This document shows, piece by piece, positions 3,360 through 10,917 of a stretch of DNA of 64,000 nucleotides (position 1 is the stretch's first letter; each line of letters opens with the position of its first letter). The stretch is from Obrimoposthia wandeli. Its lineage: Eukaryota. A program made the translations under genes and the position numbers. Under the pieces are notes generated by a model. It made no database searches and was not told the DNA's origin. It saw nothing but the letters and a program-made list of their open reading frames with translations. Where the stretch lies: NCBI GenBank assembly GCA_977020255.1, contig CDROCS010005164.1, forward strand, positions 1-64,000. The letters run 5' to 3'.

Positions 3360-4065
3360 CATTTTGGCCTTAGATACATCAACGGACGCATGCTCAGTTG
3401 CACTTGAAGTAAACGGCGAGCGCACAGAGATTTTCAAAGTAATACCCCGTAAACATACCCATGAGTTACTCCCAATGGTTGAGCAGATATTGGCGCAAGC
3501 TCAGTTAAAGGTAAATCAGTTAGATGCCATCGCCTTTGGCAGAGGCCCCGGCTCTTTTGCTGGTATTCGCATAGCCACAGGCGTTGCCCAAGGGTTTGCT
3601 TTCGCTGCTGATTTAGCTGTAGTGCCGGTTTCTACATTGGCTACACTTGCGCAAGGGTATTATCGCCAGCATGGCAGCCCTGAGCAATTAGAAGCGCAAC
3701 AACTCATCATTACAGCACTCGATGCGCGTATGGATGAAGTGTATTGGGGCGGCTATAAAATAGTAGATAACATAGTACAACGGGTGATAGATGAAAGTGT
3801 TTGTGCACCCGCGAAAATGCAAATCAACATCGACAATGGACAGTCTTGTGTTGGAGTGGGTAGTGGTTTTAATTATCAAGAACAGATGCCGACTTCGTTT
3901 ACGCAAATTTTGGCCAGTGTTAATAATGAAACACATCCGCATTCTCAAGACATACTCGCTATCGCAAGTGTTGAGTTTGCATTAGGAAATACAGTGCGCG
4001 CAGAAGATGCTCAGCCTGTGTATTTACGCAACCAAGTAGCATGGAAGAAAAAGGATCAGCAATAA
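3352..4065 (+). CDS. tsaB: tRNA t6A biosynthesis protein TsaB
   Basis: ILALDTST, GRGPGSFAGIRIA and DARMDEVY motifs, C-terminal PVYLRN. Confidence 0.93.
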   Translation: MANILALDTSTDACSVALEVNGERTEIFKVIPRKHTHELLPMVEQILAQAQLKVNQLDAIAFGRGPGSFAGIRIATGVAQGFAFAADLAVVPVSTLATLAQGYYRQHGSPEQLEAQQLIITALDARMDEVYWGGYKIVDNIVQRVIDESVCAPAKMQINIDNGQSCVGVGSGFNYQEQMPTSFTQILASVNNETHPHSQDILAIASVEFALGNTVRAEDAQPVYLRNQVAWKKKDQQ

Positions 4066-4872
4066 ATGGAATGGTTACACGTTTTTGTCTTGGCCATAAT
4101 ACAAGGTCTCACTGAGTTTTTACCCGTATCAAGTTCAGCACATTTAATACTACCTTCACAAATTTTAGGCTGGCCTGATCAAGGGCTGGCGTTTGATGTT
4201 GGGGTGCATGTAGGCACACTGGCCGCGGTATTGGTTTATTTTCGCAAAGATGTATTAGTGATGTTAACCGCTTTTTTCAAAAGCTTAACGGGTCAGCAAA
4301 GTGTTGATGGGCGTATTGCGTGGTTTATTATTGCTGCGACGATACCTGCCTTAGCTGCCGGTTTATTATTAAATGACATTATCGATCAATATGGCAGAAC
4401 CACATTGGTCATTGCAGGAGCTACATTAATTTTTGGTGCCTTGCTGTGGTTTGCTGATACGCGTGAAAATGCACAAAAAAAGATTGAAGACATAGGTATA
4501 AAAGAAGCGATAATTATTGGCTTCTCTCAGGCTATTGCATTAATACCAGGTACTTCTCGCTCAGGTATTACGATGACCGCGGCGTTAATGCTCGGTTTTA
4601 GCCGCCAAGCAGCTGCCCGTTTTTCATTTTTATTGTCTATTCCTATTATATTAGCCGCAGGCTCATACAAAGGGTTAGAAATGATCAGCTCTGATGTGTT
4701 GGTACGCTGGGATATGGTCTTCACCGGTATCGTGGTTTCTGCTTTGGTGGCGATTGCGTGTATTCATTACTTTTTAATCGCTTTAGAGAAAGTCGGCATG
4801 CTCCCTTTTGTGATTTACCGTTTTGTTTTAGGTTTTGGCTTACTGGCAATGTATTTCACGACAGGCGCTTAA
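4066..4872 (+). CDS. uppP: Undecaprenyl-diphosphate phosphatase
   Basis: QGLTEFLPVSSSAH and PGTSRSGIT motifs; multi-pass membrane protein. Confidence 0.95.
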   Translation: MEWLHVFVLAIIQGLTEFLPVSSSAHLILPSQILGWPDQGLAFDVGVHVGTLAAVLVYFRKDVLVMLTAFFKSLTGQQSVDGRIAWFIIAATIPALAAGLLLNDIIDQYGRTTLVIAGATLIFGALLWFADTRENAQKKIEDIGIKEAIIIGFSQAIALIPGTSRSGITMTAALMLGFSRQAAARFSFLLSIPIILAAGSYKGLEMISSDVLVRWDMVFTGIVVSALVAIACIHYFLIALEKVGMLPFVIYRFVLGFGLLAMYFTTGA

Positions 4873-4881
4873 GTAAAAGCA

Positions 4882-4951
4882 TTTAATAGAGATGAATTAG
4901 GCACGGCCTAAATCATCAGAGGATTAATGCCCCGCAGCTTACAGCGGGGTA
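4882..4951. repeat. Dispersed hairpin motif, copy 1, followed by a second GC-rich hairpin
   Basis: TTTAATAGAGATGAATTAGGC-acg-GCCTAAATCATCA (4882-4918) matches 9108-9143 except for the loop. It is followed by TGCCCCGC-N8-GCGGGGTA (4928-4951). Confidence 0.85.
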
Positions 4952-4996
4952 GTTGATTGAAGTAAACTGTTGAATTAACAATATAAGATATTAAAC

Positions 4997-5794
4997 ATGA
5001 CTGAATCAGCTATCCAAGTCGGTGCAACGCACATGGCGTATCAAAACCAAGCGCAGTTATTAGCCCAAAGTTTGCAGTTAGAATATGTAAAAGTGGTGAG
5101 TGACATTAAGCGCTGCCCATACCAAACACTCTTGTTAGTAACTGATCAAGGGGTGCAGTTACAACAGTGCGGTAAAAAAGCACCCGGCCCTATATGGGTT
5201 GATTTTGTGACAGGTAGTGTGGCCCATAGGCGAATATTTGGTGGCGGCTCAGGGCAGATGATTGCGAAAGCAGTGGGCATTAAAAGCGGTGTGCGCCCCG
5301 ACATATTAGATGTGACAGCAGGGCTGGGTAAAGATGCTTTTGTACTGGCTACGTTAGGCTGCAAAGTACAAATGATCGAGCGCTCACCTATCGTACATTG
5401 CCTATTAGCTGACGGTTTATTACGTGCAGAGATTAATTACGATGTGATGGATATCATCGCCAATTTGAAATTATTAAATACAGATGGCATCACTTACATG
5501 CGTGAATGCGCACAAAAGCCACAAGTTATCTATGTTGACCCAATGTTTCCTCACAGCACAAAAAGTGCAGGTGTGAAAAAAGAGATGTTAATATTTAGAG
5601 ACATAGTGGGAGATGATGCCGATGCAGGTGAACTCCTCGCTTGTGCACTTGAAACAGCCAGCGCGCGAGTTGTGGTAAAAAGGCCGCGTAAAGCACCTAT
5701 TATAGATGTCGCTAACAGTGATATTAAGCCCAGCTATGTACTTGAAGGTAAATCAAGTCGTTATGATATTTATGCGCTAAAGAAGGTTGTTTAG
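4997..5794 (+). CDS. rsmJ: 16S rRNA m2G1516 methyltransferase RsmJ-like
   Basis: [41 protein letters not shown] and [11 protein letters not shown] motifs. Confidence 0.9.
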
Positions 5795-6591
5795 TTATCA
5801 CTTATAGTCTTTAAATGTGCTGATTTTATGCGCAAAAAAGTGCCGTCTTTTTGAATCATTGCTAAGCCTTTATTGAAATCTTGCATGATTGATTTTGAGT
5901 CACGTAGTTTCTTTGACAGTGTAATATAAACATTATTAGTTTTTAAACTGGGGTTATACACGGTTAAAGCGGCTGTTTTTGGTGCATGTTTCTCAACTAA
6001 AAAATTCAGATGCTCTTTACCTGTCACCATAAAATCAATGCGCCCAGAGAGTAGCTTTCTTAAATTTTGGGCGCCACTGTTGCTGTAAGAAAAATTTAAA
6101 CCAGTGGCATGGTCTAGTTCAGTGGAATTGACAGCACCGCGCATTACACCAATCTTGTAAGGGGCTAAATCAGCAAGCGAGTTGTAGCTTAATTCATTTT
6201 CGGCTAATGCCACTAATACCGTATCCTCTTTACCTAGGACATTAGAATAATAATAAAATTGAGCTCGTGTTTCTGTGTGATAAGCACCTAGCAAACCGTC
6301 ATATAGGCCTCTGCTAGCGCCTTTGACCGCGCGTTTCCAAGGCATGAATTTAACCTCTAGATTATAACCCATCGCTTTAAATGCCGCTTTACATACCGCT
6401 ATCATAAAACCACCATGCTCAAGCTCTGGTCCATAAAATGGCTGCCATTGATCGGTTGCCAGCGTAATTTTTTTTCTAGGATAAAGATCATCAGCAAAGC
6501 TACTGACAGGCATGCACAAAGTGATAACGAGCGCAGTGCATAAAAGAGAGCGCGCATAAAAGCGATAAAGTGAAGTAAACGTATACTGCAT
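5791..6591 (-). CDS. Solute-binding protein family 3 (amino-acid ABC type), stand-alone
   Basis: [10 protein letters not shown]...MPWKRAV...G.YDGL signature. Start moved from the track's 6765 to ATG 6591, which has an AAAGG SD and a following signal-peptide-like segment. Confidence 0.75.
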
Positions 6592-6764
6592 ATAAACATC
6601 AACCTTTGTTGATAGCATTCCATCCATTGGATTTACGACCGACTTGGAACTAATATTGATTAAGCTATGGTCAATGCTGTTGTTCAATATACCTTGAAAT
6701 ATGGATTTAAAACAAGTGATCAACAGTGAACAGTAATTGAGATGGGGCCTATAAGCATAAGTCA

Positions 6765-7223
6765 CTAGATAATGTGATCAAGTGGCAGCTGCGTTTGGTA
6801 CTTTAGCTCCTCCATAACAAAGCTTGAACTGACATCAAAAATATCGGCTTTAATAAGCTGTTTATATAATTGGTCAAAATCAGACATATCAGAAACCACT
6901 GCTTTTAACAGGTAATCTAAATCACCACTCATTCTGTACACTTCTAAAATTTGCGGCAAGTTTTTGATTACATCACGAAATTGCCCTACCCATTCATCAT
7001 TGTGTCGGTTGGTACGAATTGAAATGAATACACTTAACGATAAATTGACACTGGCAGGTGTGAGCAGTGCCACACGATCACGAATAACATTACTTTGCAT
7101 TAACTTTTGAATACGACGCCAGCAAGCTGTTTTAGAGACATTTACTTTTTCAGCGACTTGCGCCACTGATAAGGTGTCGTCGTGCTGCATTGAATCTAAA
7201 ATGGCTATATCTATTTTATCCAT
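6765..7223 (-). CDS. Lrp/AsnC family regulator (DecR/YbaO-like)
   Basis: MDKIDIAIL...SKTACWRRIQKL HTH and EVYRMSGDLDYLLK...SSSFVMEELK. Start refined to ATG 7223. Confidence 0.88.
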   Translation of the reverse strand: MDKIDIAILDSMQHDDTLSVAQVAEKVNVSKTACWRRIQKLMQSNVIRDRVALLTPASVNLSLSVFISIRTNRHNDEWVGQFRDVIKNLPQILEVYRMSGDLDYLLKAVVSDMSDFDQLYKQLIKADIFDVSSSFVMEELKYQTQLPLDHII

Positions 7224-7423
7224 GATGTTCTCGCTAATAAAATGCTGTTTTATATTAGTCGTTATCATTATTTTACAATAGATTAACGATCGTTCCGTTA
7301 ATTTAGCATAAAAAGAAACAATGTTCTAAAATTGCTTTGTTTAAGGTCGTAATAGGAAGTAATGTTTCTATTTTTTTTAGTTATACTCTTGCTCATTGAA
7401 ACAGTAAAAATTTGGAGAGCAGC

Positions 7424-9052
7424 ATGACAATAACAATAGAGAAAATCCGAGAAAGCGTTATCGGAGAAGGTATGCTGTTTGATACAGTTTTTGGTAAAAA
7501 ACCGATGGTATATGCAGATTATACTGCATCAGGGCGCGCCTTAAGTTTTGTAGAAGATATGATCAGCAAACAGGTATTGCCTTTTTATGCCAATACTCAT
7601 TCAGAGACATCTTTTACCGGTAAGCAAAGTACACAATTTAGAGAGCAAGCAAGAGCGGCTATTCACAGTGCACTTAATACAGGTGAGCAACACAAAGTAA
7701 TATTCACCGGAGCAGGTGCTACTTCTGCCATCAATAAGTTAATAGATATGCTCAATATACGCTTACCGGCAGAGCTAAATGCAGCGTATAAATTTGAGCA
7801 ACAAATTGATGAGGAGAGCAAGCCTGTTGTTTTTGTTGGCCCTTATGAGCATCACTCAAATGAACTGCCGTGGCGCGAAAGCATTGCCACACTAGTATCA
7901 ATACCTTTTAATAGCGAAGGCATGATTGATACGCAGTATCTTGAACAGCAATTACAGCACTACAAAGCTAGGCCTTTATTGATCGGCAGTTTTTCAGCAG
8001 CCTCTAATGTTACCGGCATCAAAACTGATATCGCTAAAGTGTCATCAGTATTGAAAAAGCATAATGCCATGTCTTGTTGGGATTACGCCGCTGCCGCACC
8101 TTATGTTGGCATTGATATGCAACGTGATCAATTAGATGCAGTGTTTATATCTACTCACAAATTTATTGGTGGGCCAGGTACTCCAGGCTTATTAGTTGTT
8201 GATCAAACCTTTTTAAAGAACTCAGTACCCGCAATTCCAGGTGGCGGCACCGTGATGTTTGTATCACCGCAATCACATACCTTTATTGATAATGTTGAGC
8301 GCAGAGAAGAGGGCGGTACCCCAGGTATTGTAGAGTCTATTCGTGCAGGGTTAGTGTTCAAAATTCAACAGATTATAGGTACTCAAAATATTGAAGAGCT
8401 AGAGCATGGTTACATTCAACGTGCAATAGCACATCTATCAAGTTTGGATAATTTTGAAATACTAGGCAATACTACCGCTGATCGTTTATCAATATTATCA
8501 TTTAACATCAAGCATGAAGACAGCGTGTTGCATTACGGTTTTGTAGTGGCACTACTGAATGATTTGTTTGGTATTCAAGCGCGTGGCGGCTGTTCATGTG
8601 CAGGCCCTTATGGCCATGAACTACTCGCTTTATCACTATTAGAAAGTGAAGCAATAGAAGGCCAGTTACATAAAGGTAATATGGTATTAAGACCTGGCTG
8701 GACGCGATTGAACTTTAACTACTTTATTGATGAAAATACTTTCGTGTATTTACTAGAAGCACTAAGTTTAGTGGCGGAGCACGGCTGGCGTTTATTGCCA
8801 AACTATCAATTTAACAAAGCATTAGGCACGTGGGAATTCATTGCAGGGCGCGATACATCTACCTTGTCACTTGATGATTTATTAAATAAAGAAGCAGTAA
8901 CGATTGAAAGTATCAGTAGTACACAAGTATTAAGTGATTACATAGCGCAGGCAAAACAAACATTGCTGGCAACCCATGCCTCTAACCAGGTCACGCCTTT
9001 AGAACTTAGCCCTGAGGCAGAGGCATTACGCTGGTTTTCATTAGCAAAATAA
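7424..9052 (+). CDS. PLP-dependent class V aminotransferase / cysteine desulfurase-like enzyme
   Basis: YADYTASGR, EHHSNELPW, PLP lysine in STHKFIGGPG, and QARGGCSCAGPY. GGAG SD upstream of ATG 7424. Confidence 0.88.
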   Translation: MTITIEKIRESVIGEGMLFDTVFGKKPMVYADYTASGRALSFVEDMISKQVLPFYANTHSETSFTGKQSTQFREQARAAIHSALNTGEQHKVIFTGAGATSAINKLIDMLNIRLPAELNAAYKFEQQIDEESKPVVFVGPYEHHSNELPWRESIATLVSIPFNSEGMIDTQYLEQQLQHYKARPLLIGSFSAASNVTGIKTDIAKVSSVLKKHNAMSCWDYAAAAPYVGIDMQRDQLDAVFISTHKFIGGPGTPGLLVVDQTFLKNSVPAIPGGGTVMFVSPQSHTFIDNVERREEGGTPGIVESIRAGLVFKIQQIIGTQNIEELEHGYIQRAIAHLSSLDNFEILGNTTADRLSILSFNIKHEDSVLHYGFVVALLNDLFGIQARGGCSCAGPYGHELLALSLLESEAIEGQLHKGNMVLRPGWTRLNFNYFIDENTFVYLLEALSLVAEHGWRLLPNYQFNKALGTWEFIAGRDTSTLSLDDLLNKEAVTIESISSTQVLSDYIAQAKQTLLATHASNQVTPLELSPEAEALRWFSLAK

Positions 9053-9069
9053 ATTCTTGTCAATAAAAT

Positions 9070-9099
9070 AAAACAAGTGTAGCTTCATGCACTTGTTTT
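9070..9099 (+). terminator. Intrinsic terminator after the aminotransferase
   Basis: AAAACAAGTGT-N8-GCACTTGTTTT. Confidence 0.7.
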
Positions 9100-9107
9100 A
9101 TATTAGT

Positions 9108-9170
9108 TTTAATAGAGATGAATTAGGCGAGCCTAAATCATCAAGGGTTCACGCTCTTTGGTGCGTGGAC
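9108..9170. repeat. Dispersed hairpin motif, copy 2, followed by a second hairpin
   Basis: TTTAATAGAGATGAATTAGGC-ga-GCCTAAATCATCA (9108-9143), then GTTCACGC-N8-GCGTGGAC (9147-9170). Confidence 0.85.
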
Positions 9171-9269
9171 ATGTTAGAACCAGTAGCAGCTATAAATACC
9201 CTGCTTCACGTAGTGAAGTCGAGGTTAAGCAAGAGTGCTTATCCCGGGAATTTTTATTTGGAAGATTTA

Positions 9270-10322
9270 ATGAAGCGCATCAGTGTAGAGCCGGCTTGGA
9301 TATTTAAAGATGAAAGTGGCAGCCGTTTAGACCCTCAACTTTTTTTACTTATCAGTGCCATTCACGAGCACGGCAAGTTAACACTGGCCGCTAAGCAAGT
9401 GGGCATATCGTATCGTCATAGCTGGAATATACTCAATCATTGGGCTGGTTTTTTTGGTTGCGAGCTAGTGCACTTACAAAAAGGGCGTGGTGCTACATTA
9501 TCACCTCTTGGAGAAAAACTTTTATGGGCACAGCAACGTTTAATTGCTCGTCTTGAGCCACAGTTACAAAGCTTTGCCTCTGAAATTAACCTTGAAATAC
9601 AGCGCAGTTTAGAGGGGGTAAAACCTTTACTGAATATCTACGCAAGTTTTGGCTATGCCGTAGAGCTACTACCTAAATTCGCCTCAAATTATCAGTTAAA
9701 CTTGCAATACAAAGGTGTTGAAGAAGCGCTGATTGCACTGAATCGTGGACAGTGTGATGTGGCAGGTTTTCATTTGCCGGTTGAACTGAAAGATGCTAAA
9801 TATCTCACAACCTATCTACGCCATTTACGCCCAAGAGCACACAATATAGTGCGTTTTATTACTCGGCGAATGGGGCTAATGGTGCGTGCGGGTAACCCTA
9901 AAGGCATTGAAGGTTTACACGATCTAATAGAAACGGATGTGAAGCTTATCAACCGTGAGCCATACTCAGGTACCCGTCATTTGTTTGATGAGCTATTAGA
10001 GCGCGAAGACATACCAGAAGAGTCCATTATTGGTTTTGATGATGTTGAGTACACACACTCAGCCATTGCCGCATATGTCGCCGCAGGTATGGCAGATGTT
10101 GGTTTTGGAGTAGAAGCCGCTGCTAAGAAATTCTCGTTGGATTTTATCCCTATCACCACAGAAAAGTATGTATTTGTTTGTAACAACAAAACATTGCAAC
10201 AAGAATCAATGCGTCGCTTCTTAGAAGAAATTCGCTCTACTGCTTTCTCTGATCAAGTAAAAAAACTGGCTGGCTATTCTCCAGAGCTTTGCGGTGATGT
10301 CGTTAATGTTGAAGATTTGTAA
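9270..10322 (+). CDS. ModE/LysR-type HTH plus PBP-like domain transcriptional regulator (FdsR-like)
   Basis: GKLTLAAKQVGISYRHSW HTH and GRGATLSPLG, then PBP_like INREPYSGTR...EYTHSAIAAYVAAGMADVGFG. Start refined to ATG 9270, because the upstream in-frame extension in the track runs through the structured leader. Confidence 0.8.
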   Translation: MKRISVEPAWIFKDESGSRLDPQLFLLISAIHEHGKLTLAAKQVGISYRHSWNILNHWAGFFGCELVHLQKGRGATLSPLGEKLLWAQQRLIARLEPQLQSFASEINLEIQRSLEGVKPLLNIYASFGYAVELLPKFASNYQLNLQYKGVEEALIALNRGQCDVAGFHLPVELKDAKYLTTYLRHLRPRAHNIVRFITRRMGLMVRAGNPKGIEGLHDLIETDVKLINREPYSGTRHLFDELLEREDIPEESIIGFDDVEYTHSAIAAYVAAGMADVGFGVEAAAKKFSLDFIPITTEKYVFVCNNKTLQQESMRRFLEEIRSTAFSDQVKKLAGYSPELCGDVVNVEDL

Positions 10323-10370
10323 GCTTAATCTATCCCAATTGTAACCCTTCTCAACACTTGATTATTATTG

Positions 10371-10400
10371 AATTAGCAAGGTAGTTAACTTTGCTAATTT
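10371..10400 (+). terminator. Probable intrinsic terminator
   Basis: AATTAGCAAG-N-TTGCTAATTTT inverted repeat downstream of the regulator. Confidence 0.5.
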
Positions 10401-10917
10401 TGTCTTACTAAGTACTTATTGTCTGCGCCTAACACTAAAAGTAGATATATATCCCTAAAAAATGCTGCAACAAATACCATAAATAAGAGTCTGCTGGCTT
10501 AGAACATCATTATTTGATTCTTTTTTGATTAATCTGGTGCAATAAAAAGACATTAATAATTAAAGTTAAACCGCGTCACTGTTTGAATCGTTATTTGTAA
10601 GACCGTGATTTATTAAGCAAACCCGCTGGCAACTCGTTAAATCTATACTATTATTAGTTTAAAGGCCTACATTGTGCGCGGGTAATTTTGGCAAACTGGC
10701 AAGTTTGAATATACCAGCGCCTAACATAAAACTGATGATATAAAATCATAGTTTTTTGCAACCACAGCCCTTTTTAGATCGCCGTTTTTTTCAAAACATA
10801 AGCCTATTGAAGCCATACGTATGAACGCATAGCTTCGAAGAGCTTTGTTGCCGGTTAAGTGTAATAGATAGAATATTGTTGAATTAGTCGTTATTTAAAG
10901 TACATAGAGGGACCATC

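What the first reader, a model, noticed from the sequence alone, without database searches (positions are those of the whole stretch)
4882..4951. Dispersed two-hairpin element found twice (4882 and 9108) with a conserved architecture but a diverged second stem
Seen: 34 nt are identical in two unrelated intergenic regions (TTTAATAGA-GATGAATTAGGC-loop-GCCTAAATCATCA), and only the 2-3 nt loop differs. Hairpin 1 has the same internal A-A mismatch in both copies. Each copy is followed within 3-9 nt by an 8-bp stem with an 8-nt loop and one G-T pair, although the sequences differ (TGCCCCGC/GCGGGGTA versus GTTCACGC/GCGTGGAC). Both copies have the same orientation and sit 5' of a + strand gene. Inference: tolerance of loop length and structure-only conservation point to a folded RNA or ssDNA element rather than a transcription-factor site. 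Candidates are an undescribed cis-regulatory RNA, a REP-like repeat, or a non-autonomous HUH-transposase substrate. The second stem of copy 1 reminds me of IS200/IS605-type end hairpins, but I cannot confirm that.
Basis: partly seen in the sequence, partly recalled or inferred. Interest (0 to 1): 0.72.

Follow-up and report, generated by a model that had tools for sequence, protein, structure and literature searches.

The report
Hairpin-headed mobile intergenic repeat family
The two look-alike hairpin stretches are complete copies (77 and 151 bases) of a small non-coding repeat that has spread into hundreds of gaps between genes in a narrow group of marine Nitrincolaceae bacteria; it is an apparently undescribed family of a well-known kind of element, not a gene-control RNA.

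Summary
Window 4882-4918 and 9108-9143 share TTTAATAGA plus a 12-bp-arm hairpin (hp1) with an A.A mismatch, and each is followed by an 8-bp GC-rich hairpin.

It is not a two-copy curiosity. The exact hairpin occurs 75 times in this assembly, which is 1.35 Gb and carries bacterial contigs. It occurs 57, 23 and 7 times in three Nitrincolaceae MAGs and 70 times in metagenome contigs. It is absent from 186 of 190 species genomes of that family.

Copies are extragenic in 158 of 159 intergenic regions and show no orientation bias toward neighbouring genes. Their ends are sharp: TTTAAT-AGA-hp1 ... GGGGATC-NTTAWT. Internally deleted forms keep both ends. Both window copies are missing at the same loci in relatives, so they are lineage-specific insertions.

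One clean empty site reads TTTAGT|GTTAT, which suggests insertion between two AT-rich half-sites with no target duplication. Tandem arrays arise by local amplification.

There is no Rfam match and no RAYT or IS200 partner. No paper in the searched library contains both arm sequences.

Verdict: a new family of REP/MITE-like mobile intergenic repeats whose mobilising enzyme is unknown. A cis-regulatory RNA is not supported.

The parts
4882..4958 (+). Copy 1: complete short-form element (77 nt) between bacA/uppP (4066-4872) and rsmJ (4997-5794)
   Evidence: nhmmer with the family profile covers 4882-4948, E 3.5e-15. The right end is set by analogy with short-form relatives L011, L057 and L110. 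The locus is empty in three related MAGs.
4882..4890 (+). Left terminal motif TTTAAT + AGA of copy 1
   Evidence: Information content jumps from about 0.1 to 1.4-2.0 bits exactly at this motif in 49 copies.
4891..4917 (+). hp1 of copy 1: GATGAATTAGGC-ACG-GCCTAAATCATC, with an A.A mismatch at arm position 6
   Evidence: RNA fold -13.2 kcal/mol, z -5.5.
4928..4951 (+). hp2 of copy 1: 8-bp GC-rich stem with an 8-nt loop
   Evidence: The same variant occurs in L011, L057, L110 and L071.
4952..4958 (+). Right terminal motif GTTGATT of copy 1, a variant of NTTAWT
   Evidence: The same variant ends the short forms L057 and L110. It also ends the L007 element, at the position of ATTATT in its orthologue L062. 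Inferred.
9108..9258 (+). Copy 2: complete long-form element (151 nt) between the aminotransferase terminator (9068-9101) and the start of a PBP_like/HTH regulator gene (9270)
   Evidence: nhmmer profile positions 1-157, E 2.2e-37. Aligned with 35 other long forms. The locus lacks it in MAGs G001 and G004.
9108..9116 (+). Left terminal motif TTTAAT + AGA of copy 2
9117..9142 (+). hp1 of copy 2: same arms, 2-nt loop GA
   Evidence: RNA fold -10.7 kcal/mol, z -4.3.
9147..9170 (+). hp2 of copy 2: GTTCACGC-tctttggt-GCGTGGAC
   Evidence: It aligns to family hp2, columns 55-71 of A1, where 5 of 6 pairs show changes on both sides somewhere in the family.
9204..9218 (+). hp3 of copy 2: CTTCAC-GTA-GTGAAG. 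Present in most subfamilies but broken in one.
9246..9258 (+). Right end of copy 2: GGGAATT + TTTATT (family consensus GGGGATC + NTTAWT)
   Evidence: Sharp drop of conservation immediately after this motif in 49 copies.

Best explanation
Both stretches are complete copies of a small, non-coding, non-autonomous mobile repeat. The family is confined to a narrow clade of marine Nitrincolaceae (Oceanospirillales-type Gammaproteobacteria), and the window's contig belongs to that clade.

An element consists of:
- a left motif TTTAAT-AGA;
- a nearly invariant 27-nt hairpin (hp1) with an A.A mismatch and a free loop;
- a variable body of 0 to about 120 nt, with a GC-rich hairpin hp2 and, in long forms, further stems;
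- a right end GGGGATC-NTTAWT.

Shown:
- It is dispersed in hundreds of copies.
- It is strictly extragenic and independent of orientation.
- Its ends are sharp.
- Deletion derivatives keep both ends.
- It is present or absent at orthologous loci.
- It is secondarily amplified into local tandem arrays.

Inferred:
- It is moved in trans by an enzyme that recognises hp1 as a DNA hairpin or cruciform, mismatch included.
- It is inserted between two AT-rich half-sites (TTTAAT | NTTAWT) without target duplication.

Any effect on neighbouring genes, such as stable hairpins placed between bacA and rsmJ or an added 5' leader for the regulator, would be a by-product.
For: Copy number and range:
- 75 exact hp1 in the assembly against 0 for the reversed control, and about 319 both-strand hits at up to 3 mismatches.
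- 37 exact hits in species genomes, all Oceanospirillaceae/Nitrincolaceae MAGs apart from one probably mis-binned contig.
- Present in 4 of 190 genomes of that family.
- 70 metagenome contigs; none in viral contigs or plasmids.

Host: RsmJ is 71-76% identical to the Nitrincolaceae MAGs and 48% to Colwellia.

Location: 158 of 159 regions are extragenic, with no strand bias.

Ends: sharp in 49 copies, with random flanks. Short forms of 77-107 nt retain both ends.

Mobility:
- The bacA-rsmJ gap is 0-25 nt in three relatives and 124 nt here.
- The element is missing upstream of the regulator gene in G001 and G004.
- A clean pair at 91-95% flank identity: L081 filled, L093 empty.
- Coordinates indicate further empty sites.

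Constraint on hp1:
- BLAST from the window copy gives 86-98% identity over the 42-nt core but 70-75% over whole elements.
- The A.A mismatch is kept in 218 of 225 copies.

Arrays: one full element in L062 corresponds to a 5-unit array of flank + hp1 + 40 nt in the orthologous L007.
Against: No transposase, integrase or other partner gene was found next to any copy. No autonomous-sized element bounded by the two ends was found in 1.24 Mb of held sequence.

The insertion mechanism rests on a single high-identity empty/filled pair in AT-rich DNA. A 6-bp duplication of a preferred TTTAWT target plus local divergence is less parsimonious but not excluded.

The extreme conservation of hp1 is partly an ascertainment effect. 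Copies found through their tails carry 1-5 mismatches in hp1 or lack it.

No expression or biochemical data could be obtained.
Confidence: 0.8

Rival explanations
1. It is a classical REP/REPIN family spread by a REP-associated tyrosine transposase (RAYT), which binds the hairpin and cuts at the conserved 5' tail.
For: The architecture resembles REP: a conserved tail (..ATAG-A) directly 5' of an imperfect palindrome with one mismatch, an extragenic location, many copies, and tandem clusters that include flanking DNA. RAYT-like genes exist in MAGs G001 and G004, scoring 57-80 bits against NCBIfam NF047646.
Against: None of 27 Y1_Tnp loci (20 in the assembly, 7 in MAGs) has hp1 within 1.5 kb, apart from one IS200-type pseudogene that looks like an independent insertion. 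The RAYT-like genes are flanked by their own, different 25-26-nt inverted repeats. G003 has 23 or more copies but only Y1 fragments. Copies lie head-to-tail, not in inverted pairs. The elements also have a defined second end.
Confidence: 0.08
2. It is a cis-regulatory or small RNA (riboswitch-like leader, attenuator or mRNA stabiliser) selected for its fold.
For: The hairpins are stable, with z from -3 to -5.5. Loop length is free. hp2 has compensatory changes. In the window both copies point toward a downstream gene, and copy 2 ends 11 nt before a start codon.
Against: There is no orientation bias over 159 regions. Neighbours are unrelated (ABC transporters, LysR, SDR, response regulators, rsmJ). 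The reverse strand folds as well. G.T and A.C mismatches are roughly balanced. hp3 and hp4 break in a whole subfamily. Rfam gives nothing even at E up to 10. Relatives do without the element at the same loci.
Confidence: 0.05
3. It is a non-autonomous derivative of an IS200/IS605-type element (a PATE), moved as single-stranded DNA by a Y1 HUH transposase that inserts 3' of a short target.
For: There is no target duplication, the ends are asymmetric, a subterminal imperfect hairpin has a conserved mismatch, and TTTAAT always precedes the left end as a target would. IS200-type tnpA genes are present in the same assembly.
Against: The right flank (NTTAWT) is conserved as well, which this family does not require. 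The right end has no hairpin resembling hp1. hp1 starts only 3 nt from the presumed cleavage point. No tnpA is bounded by these ends.
Confidence: 0.1
4. It is inserted by a site-specific recombinase that reads a 12-nt target, either IS110/IS1111-like (guide-RNA directed) or another recombinase. The conserved TTTAAT and NTTAWT would then be target DNA rather than element DNA.
For: The clean empty site reads TTTAGT|GTTAT, including the copy-specific G of the right motif. No duplication is seen. A short imperfect inverted repeat AATARAGAT/ATCNTTATT straddles the junctions, matching 7-8 of 9 positions in 33 of 49 copies. Target-like 12-mers with up to 1 mismatch are common, 20 in 64 kb. IS110-family genes occur in these MAGs.
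Against: There is only one informative pair. IS110-family genes are also present in relatives without the element (G187) and in G186, which has one site, and none lies near a copy. Non-autonomous IS110 derivatives are, to my knowledge, not established.
Confidence: 0.12
5. It does not transpose. hp1 is a host-protein or uptake/recombination signal, and the mosaic spreads by homologous recombination and local duplication, as proposed for Neisseria dRS3/NIME arrays.
For: Arrays alternate a constant hp1 with array-specific segments. Arrays grow by local amplification and vary in unit number between metagenome contigs. No transposase was found.
Against: Single copies with identical sharp ends lie at more than 150 unrelated loci. 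Deletion derivatives keep both ends. Both are the signature of end-dependent transposition.
Confidence: 0.07

Closest known systems
REP / BIME / REPIN elements with RAYT (TnpA-REP) of Enterobacteria and Pseudomonas
   Same: A 25-35-nt imperfect palindrome with a conserved 5' tail and one mismatch. Strictly extragenic, with tens to hundreds of copies per genome, lineage-specific, and forming clusters and tandem duplications that include flanking DNA.
   Different: No RAYT is flanked by it, and the RAYT-like genes present carry other repeats. Copies are head-to-tail rather than in inverted pairs. The hairpin heads a 77-160-nt element with a second defined end. The stem is AT-rich.
Bacterial MITE-like repeats (Correia/NEMIS, ERIC, RUP, BOX)
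   Same: Size of 70-160 nt, non-coding, intergenic, present or absent between relatives. Modular bodies with internal deletions that keep the termini, and a potential to form stable RNA hairpins in operons.
   Different: No long terminal inverted repeats (only about 9 imperfect bp straddling the junctions). No visible target-site duplication. No parent insertion sequence identified.
IS200/IS605 family and its palindrome-associated derivatives (PATEs)
   Same: Asymmetric ends, a subterminal imperfect hairpin, no duplication, and a conserved short sequence 5' of the left end.
   Different: The right flank is also conserved. There is no hp1-like hairpin at the right end and no tnpA within such ends.
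Neisseria dRS3 repeats and intergenic mosaic elements (NIMEs)
   Same: A short constant palindromic repeat alternates with variable segments in intergenic arrays.
   Different: Here the arrays can be traced to local amplification of one insertion plus flank. Most copies are single elements with fixed ends.
CRISPR arrays (considered because of 59-62-nt periodicity)
   Same: A 27-nt palindromic repeat spaced by 32-35 nt in some arrays.
   Different: The 'spacers' within an array are near-identical copies of one another, so these are tandem duplications rather than spacer acquisition.

Membership tests
REP/RAYT system | Short imperfect extragenic palindrome in many copies | tested here: met
REP/RAYT system | A RAYT (Y1 HUH) gene flanked by the same palindromes in inverted orientation | tested here: not met
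   27 PF01797 loci carry no hp1. The RAYT-like genes in L133 and L135 are flanked by different inverted repeats. The MAGs are incomplete, and 15 hits in the assembly were not fetched.
MITE (DDE-transposase derived) | Terminal inverted repeats matching a parent insertion sequence | tested here: inconclusive
   Only a 9-bp imperfect repeat, 7-8 of 9 in 33 of 49 copies, offset by 3 nt at the left. No element longer than 320 nt is bounded by the two ends without another hp1 between them.
MITE (DDE-transposase derived) | Target-site duplication flanking each copy | tested here: not met
   Flanks beyond the motifs are random and not repeated. The left motif is TTTAAT while the right is mostly NTTATT, so they are not identical. 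The empty site holds both half-motifs, but this rests on one pair.
MITE (DDE-transposase derived) | Presence/absence polymorphism and deletion derivatives that keep both ends | tested here: met
IS200/IS605 PATE | Similar subterminal hairpins at both ends on the same strand | tested here: not met
   The right end has only the CCCCG...CGGGG closing stem, with no hp1-like hairpin.
IS200/IS605 PATE | Insertion 3' of a fixed 4-5-nt target without duplication | tested here: inconclusive
   TTTAAT always precedes the element and no duplication is seen, but the right flank is constrained too.
Rfam cis-regulatory or small RNA families | Match to a curated covariance model | tested here: not met
   cmscan of 4000-10500 at E up to 10 gave only a chance rncO hit of 15.9 bits against a gathering score of 43.
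Cis-regulatory RNA in general | Fixed orientation and position relative to the regulated gene, with coherent gene functions | tested here: not met
   68 same and 79 opposite to the downstream gene. Neighbours are unrelated.
CRISPR | Unique spacers between repeats | tested here: not met
   Spacers within each array are copies of one another.
IS110/IS1111-type site-specific insertion | DEDD transposase and guide RNA inside the element, with conserved target on both flanks and no duplication | tested here: inconclusive
   The flank pattern fits. No transposase lies inside any copy. IS110 genes are present but uncorrelated with the element. Their flanks could not be read.

The most novel reading that the evidence does not exclude
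The mobile unit may be as small as AGA + hp1 (about 30 nt, as in L125 and the 41-nt arrays). It would be placed, without any duplication, exactly between two AT-rich half-sites (TTTAAT | NTTAWT) by a hairpin- or guide-directed recombinase that is encoded elsewhere and not yet recognised. That would make it a trans-mobilised, site-specific mini-element of a type not described for bacteria.
Probability: 0.15. Interest if true: 0.7.

Novelty: new member of a known kind. Interest (0 to 1): 0.4.

Why it matters
Families of small intergenic repeats shape bacterial genomes. They affect mRNA stability, operon polarity and recombination hotspots, and they serve as strain-typing markers. For most such families outside the REP/RAYT pairs the mobilising enzyme is unknown.

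This family offers three things:
- A clean, narrowly distributed case in an ecologically important marine group (Nitrincolaceae).
- An almost invariant hairpin with a conserved mismatch, which gives a handle for pulling down the protein that reads it.
- Junctions that hint at duplication-free, site-specific insertion.

Practically, it should be masked or annotated. Its periodic arrays can be mistaken for CRISPR, and its copies for regulatory RNAs. It also flags contigs of this bacterial clade inside a eukaryotic assembly.

Tried and rejected
- **CRISPR**: rejected because the spacers within each array repeat.
- **Known RNA family**: the permissive Rfam scan found nothing.
- **RAYT or IS200 partner**: Y1_Tnp was searched in the assembly and four MAGs. 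No locus is flanked by hp1, and the adjacent pseudogene in L037 is an independent IS200.
- **Recurrent neighbouring gene**: all-against-all comparison of 621 flanking ORFs found only large housekeeping paralogue families.
- **Autonomous parent**: none in held loci.
- **Phage or plasmid carriage**: none.
- **IS110 correlation**: uninformative.
- **Colwellia occurrence**: rejected as probable mis-binning.
- **L093/L081 at the first site**: this looked like an empty site but is a decayed remnant.
- **More empty sites**: only one clean pair was found among held loci.
- **Literature**: no paper pairs Nitrincolaceae with REP, and none holds both arm sequences.
- **Not needed**: the large protein searches and structure prediction were not used.

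Full report
**Observation**

The two stretches are as described. TTTAATAGA plus the left arm GATGAATTAGGC is exact at 4882-4902 and 9108-9128. Shuffles of the window give no such match. The right arm GCCTAAATCATC follows a loop of ACG or GA. The arms pair at 11 of 12 positions, with the same A.A mismatch.

The second hairpins lie at 4928-4951 and 9147-9170. Each has 8 bp, an 8-nt loop and one G.T pair. Folding as RNA or DNA returns exactly these hairpins, with z-scores from -4 to -6. The reverse strand folds equally well.

**Scale**

The assembly that holds the window is 1.35 Gb in 6912 contigs. It is a eukaryotic assembly with many bacterial contigs. The exact hairpin occurs 75 times on about 33 contigs, and the reversed control gives 0. 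At up to 3 mismatches there are 319 both-strand hits.

Elsewhere the counts are:
- A scan of one genome per species found 37 exact hits. All are in three Oceanospirillaceae/Nitrincolaceae MAGs, apart from one 'Colwellia' contig. That contig is 99.4% identical to a contig of one of those MAGs and is probably mis-binned.
- Within the 190 species genomes of that family, only four carry the hairpin: 57, 23, 7 and 2 hits (the last is one palindromic site counted on both strands).
- Seventy metagenome contigs carry it.
- Viral contigs and plasmids do not.

The window's own bacterium belongs to this group. Its RsmJ is 71-76% identical to the three MAGs and 48% to Colwellia.

**Anatomy**

Lining up the copies showed that hp1 is the head of a longer element. 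Thirty-six long forms of 140-160 nt align over their whole length at 81% mean column identity. Window copy 2 (9108-9258) is one of them, and copy 1 matches the first 67 profile positions.

Conservation starts abruptly at TTTAAT-AGA-hp1 and stops abruptly after GGGGATC-NTTAWT. The flanks beyond are random. Many shorter forms (77-107 nt) lack internal parts but keep both ends. Copy 1 is such a form and ends in the variant GTTGATT at 4952-4958.

Across 225 distinct copies the loop is free, mostly GGA, GCA, GTA or ACA. The A.A mismatch is kept in 218 copies. One stem pair has switched from T-A to G-C in 17 copies, with G.A intermediates.

For the stems downstream of hp1:
- In hp2, 5 of 6 pairs show changes on both sides. 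The two pairs next to the loop alternate between CG and TA.
- The 3' stems are weakly supported and are broken in a whole subfamily.
- G.T and A.C mismatches are roughly balanced, so nothing points to one functional strand.

**Location and mobility**

I counted each intergenic region once, using crude ORF calls. Of 159 regions, 158 place the element outside genes. Orientation is random with respect to the upstream gene (76/66) and the downstream gene (68/79). Neighbouring genes are unrelated.

Both window copies are lineage-specific insertions:
- Copy 1: bacA and rsmJ are separated by 0-25 nt in three relatives and by 124 nt here.
- Copy 2: the spacer before the regulator gene is 60-95 nt and lacks the element in two relatives.

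From the window copy, BLAST identity to copies in the MAGs is 86-98% for hits confined to the 42-nt head but 70-75% over whole elements. The head is therefore under stronger constraint. Copies found through their tails do show decayed hp1, so part of the apparent invariance is ascertainment.

**Insertion chemistry**

One pair with 91-95% identical flanks is informative. The filled site reads TTTAAT[AAAGATG...AAAGATC]GTTATT and the empty site reads TTTAGT|GTTAT.

The most parsimonious reading is insertion between two AT-rich half-sites without duplication. The motifs TTTAAT and NTTAWT would then be target DNA. This also explains why N and W vary between copies. A 6-bp duplication of a preferred target would need more changes to fit, but it cannot be excluded from one AT-rich pair.

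Such 12-mers with one mismatch are frequent, 20 in this window. A 9-bp imperfect inverted repeat straddles the junctions. Coordinates from a further search indicate more empty sites, but their letters could not be fetched.

**Tandem arrays**

Arrays have periods of 41, 59-62 and 100 nt. They share hp1 but have array-specific filler that is repeated within each array, so they are not CRISPR.

An orthologous pair shows how they arise. A single full element in one MAG corresponds, in the assembly's contig C2422, to five tandem copies of 25 nt of flanking gene end plus hp1 plus the first 40 nt of the element. Unit numbers differ between metagenome contigs.

**Who moves it**

This is not settled. 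The evidence is:
- Y1 HUH transposase genes are present, but none of the 27 loci examined is flanked by hp1. The one adjacent case is an IS200-type pseudogene with its own leader.
- The RAYT-like genes of the MAGs carry different flanking repeats.
- No gene family recurs next to copies apart from large housekeeping families.
- No long element with these ends exists in 1.24 Mb of held sequence.
- IS110-family genes occur both with and without the element.

I therefore commit only to a trans-acting enzyme that reads the hairpin together with its mismatch. The class remains open: HUH, IS110-like or another recombinase.

**Comparison and novelty**

The permissive Rfam scan gives nothing. No paper in the searched library pairs Nitrincolaceae with REP elements, and none holds both arm sequences.

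The family works like REP and MITE elements but fails the defining tests of each:
- REP/RAYT: no cognate RAYT.
- Classical MITEs: no long inverted repeats and no duplication.
- IS200/IS605 derivatives: no second similar hairpin.

I file it as a new family within the known kind 'small mobile intergenic repeats'. The insertion mode is the one feature that could make it more than that.

**Limits**

- Gene calls in the loci are ORF-based.

Noticed in passing
L103 about 1555-1690; also L054, L087, L080 and the minus-strand copy in L092: A second, unrelated small element with terminal inverted repeats AGGCTGTCGCAA...TTGCGACAGCCT is inserted into hairpin 2 of several copies. It looks like another MITE family of the same bacteria.
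   Followed up: no
L037 1501-1890 (minus strand), G000 contig C1143: An IS200-type tnpA pseudogene (five in-frame stops) lies about 170 nt downstream of a long-form copy. It shares 93% identity with an intact copy on C2866 (L031).
   Followed up: partly
L133 1380-2217 and L135 1413-2320 (MAG JABSRB01): Two RAYT-like genes (257 and 281 aa) are each bracketed by their own 25-26-nt inverted repeats. This indicates at least two other REP-type families in these genomes. The same repeat as in L133 recurs in L132.
   Followed up: partly
L056 versus L067: A contig binned as Colwellia (JALJPA010000328.1) is 99.4% identical over 3.5 kb to a Nitrincolaceae MAG contig (JABSRB010000068.1). This is probably a binning error in the public MAG.
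   Followed up: partly
L151 2915-3290, L160 7604-7727, L188 12940-13712: Arrays of a minimal 41-nt unit (TTAATAGA + hp1 + AAGGGC) carry a T-A to G-C double change at stem pair 8. Unit numbers differ between metagenome contigs.
   Followed up: partly
L092 1401-2740: A 309-aa gene is bracketed by two outward-facing copies. Its stop codon TAA lies inside the TTTAATAGA end of one copy. The other copy begins 8 nt upstream of its start codon, just beyond the RBS.
   Followed up: no
L128 1433-1498: A decayed copy sits directly on the rsmJ stop codon in MAG G001, at a site that is empty in the window and in two other MAGs.
   Followed up: partly
window 9068-9101: A 14-bp-stem intrinsic terminator of the aminotransferase gene lies immediately upstream of copy 2. 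The regulator gene at 9270 therefore has no obvious promoter of its own between the terminator and its start codon, other than within the element.
   Followed up: no
window as a whole (contig C5164 of a 1.35-Gb assembly): The window is a bacterial (Nitrincolaceae-like) contig inside a large eukaryotic assembly. Earlier notes of this scan describe several other marine Gammaproteobacteria (Oleispira, Moritella) in that assembly.
   Followed up: partly
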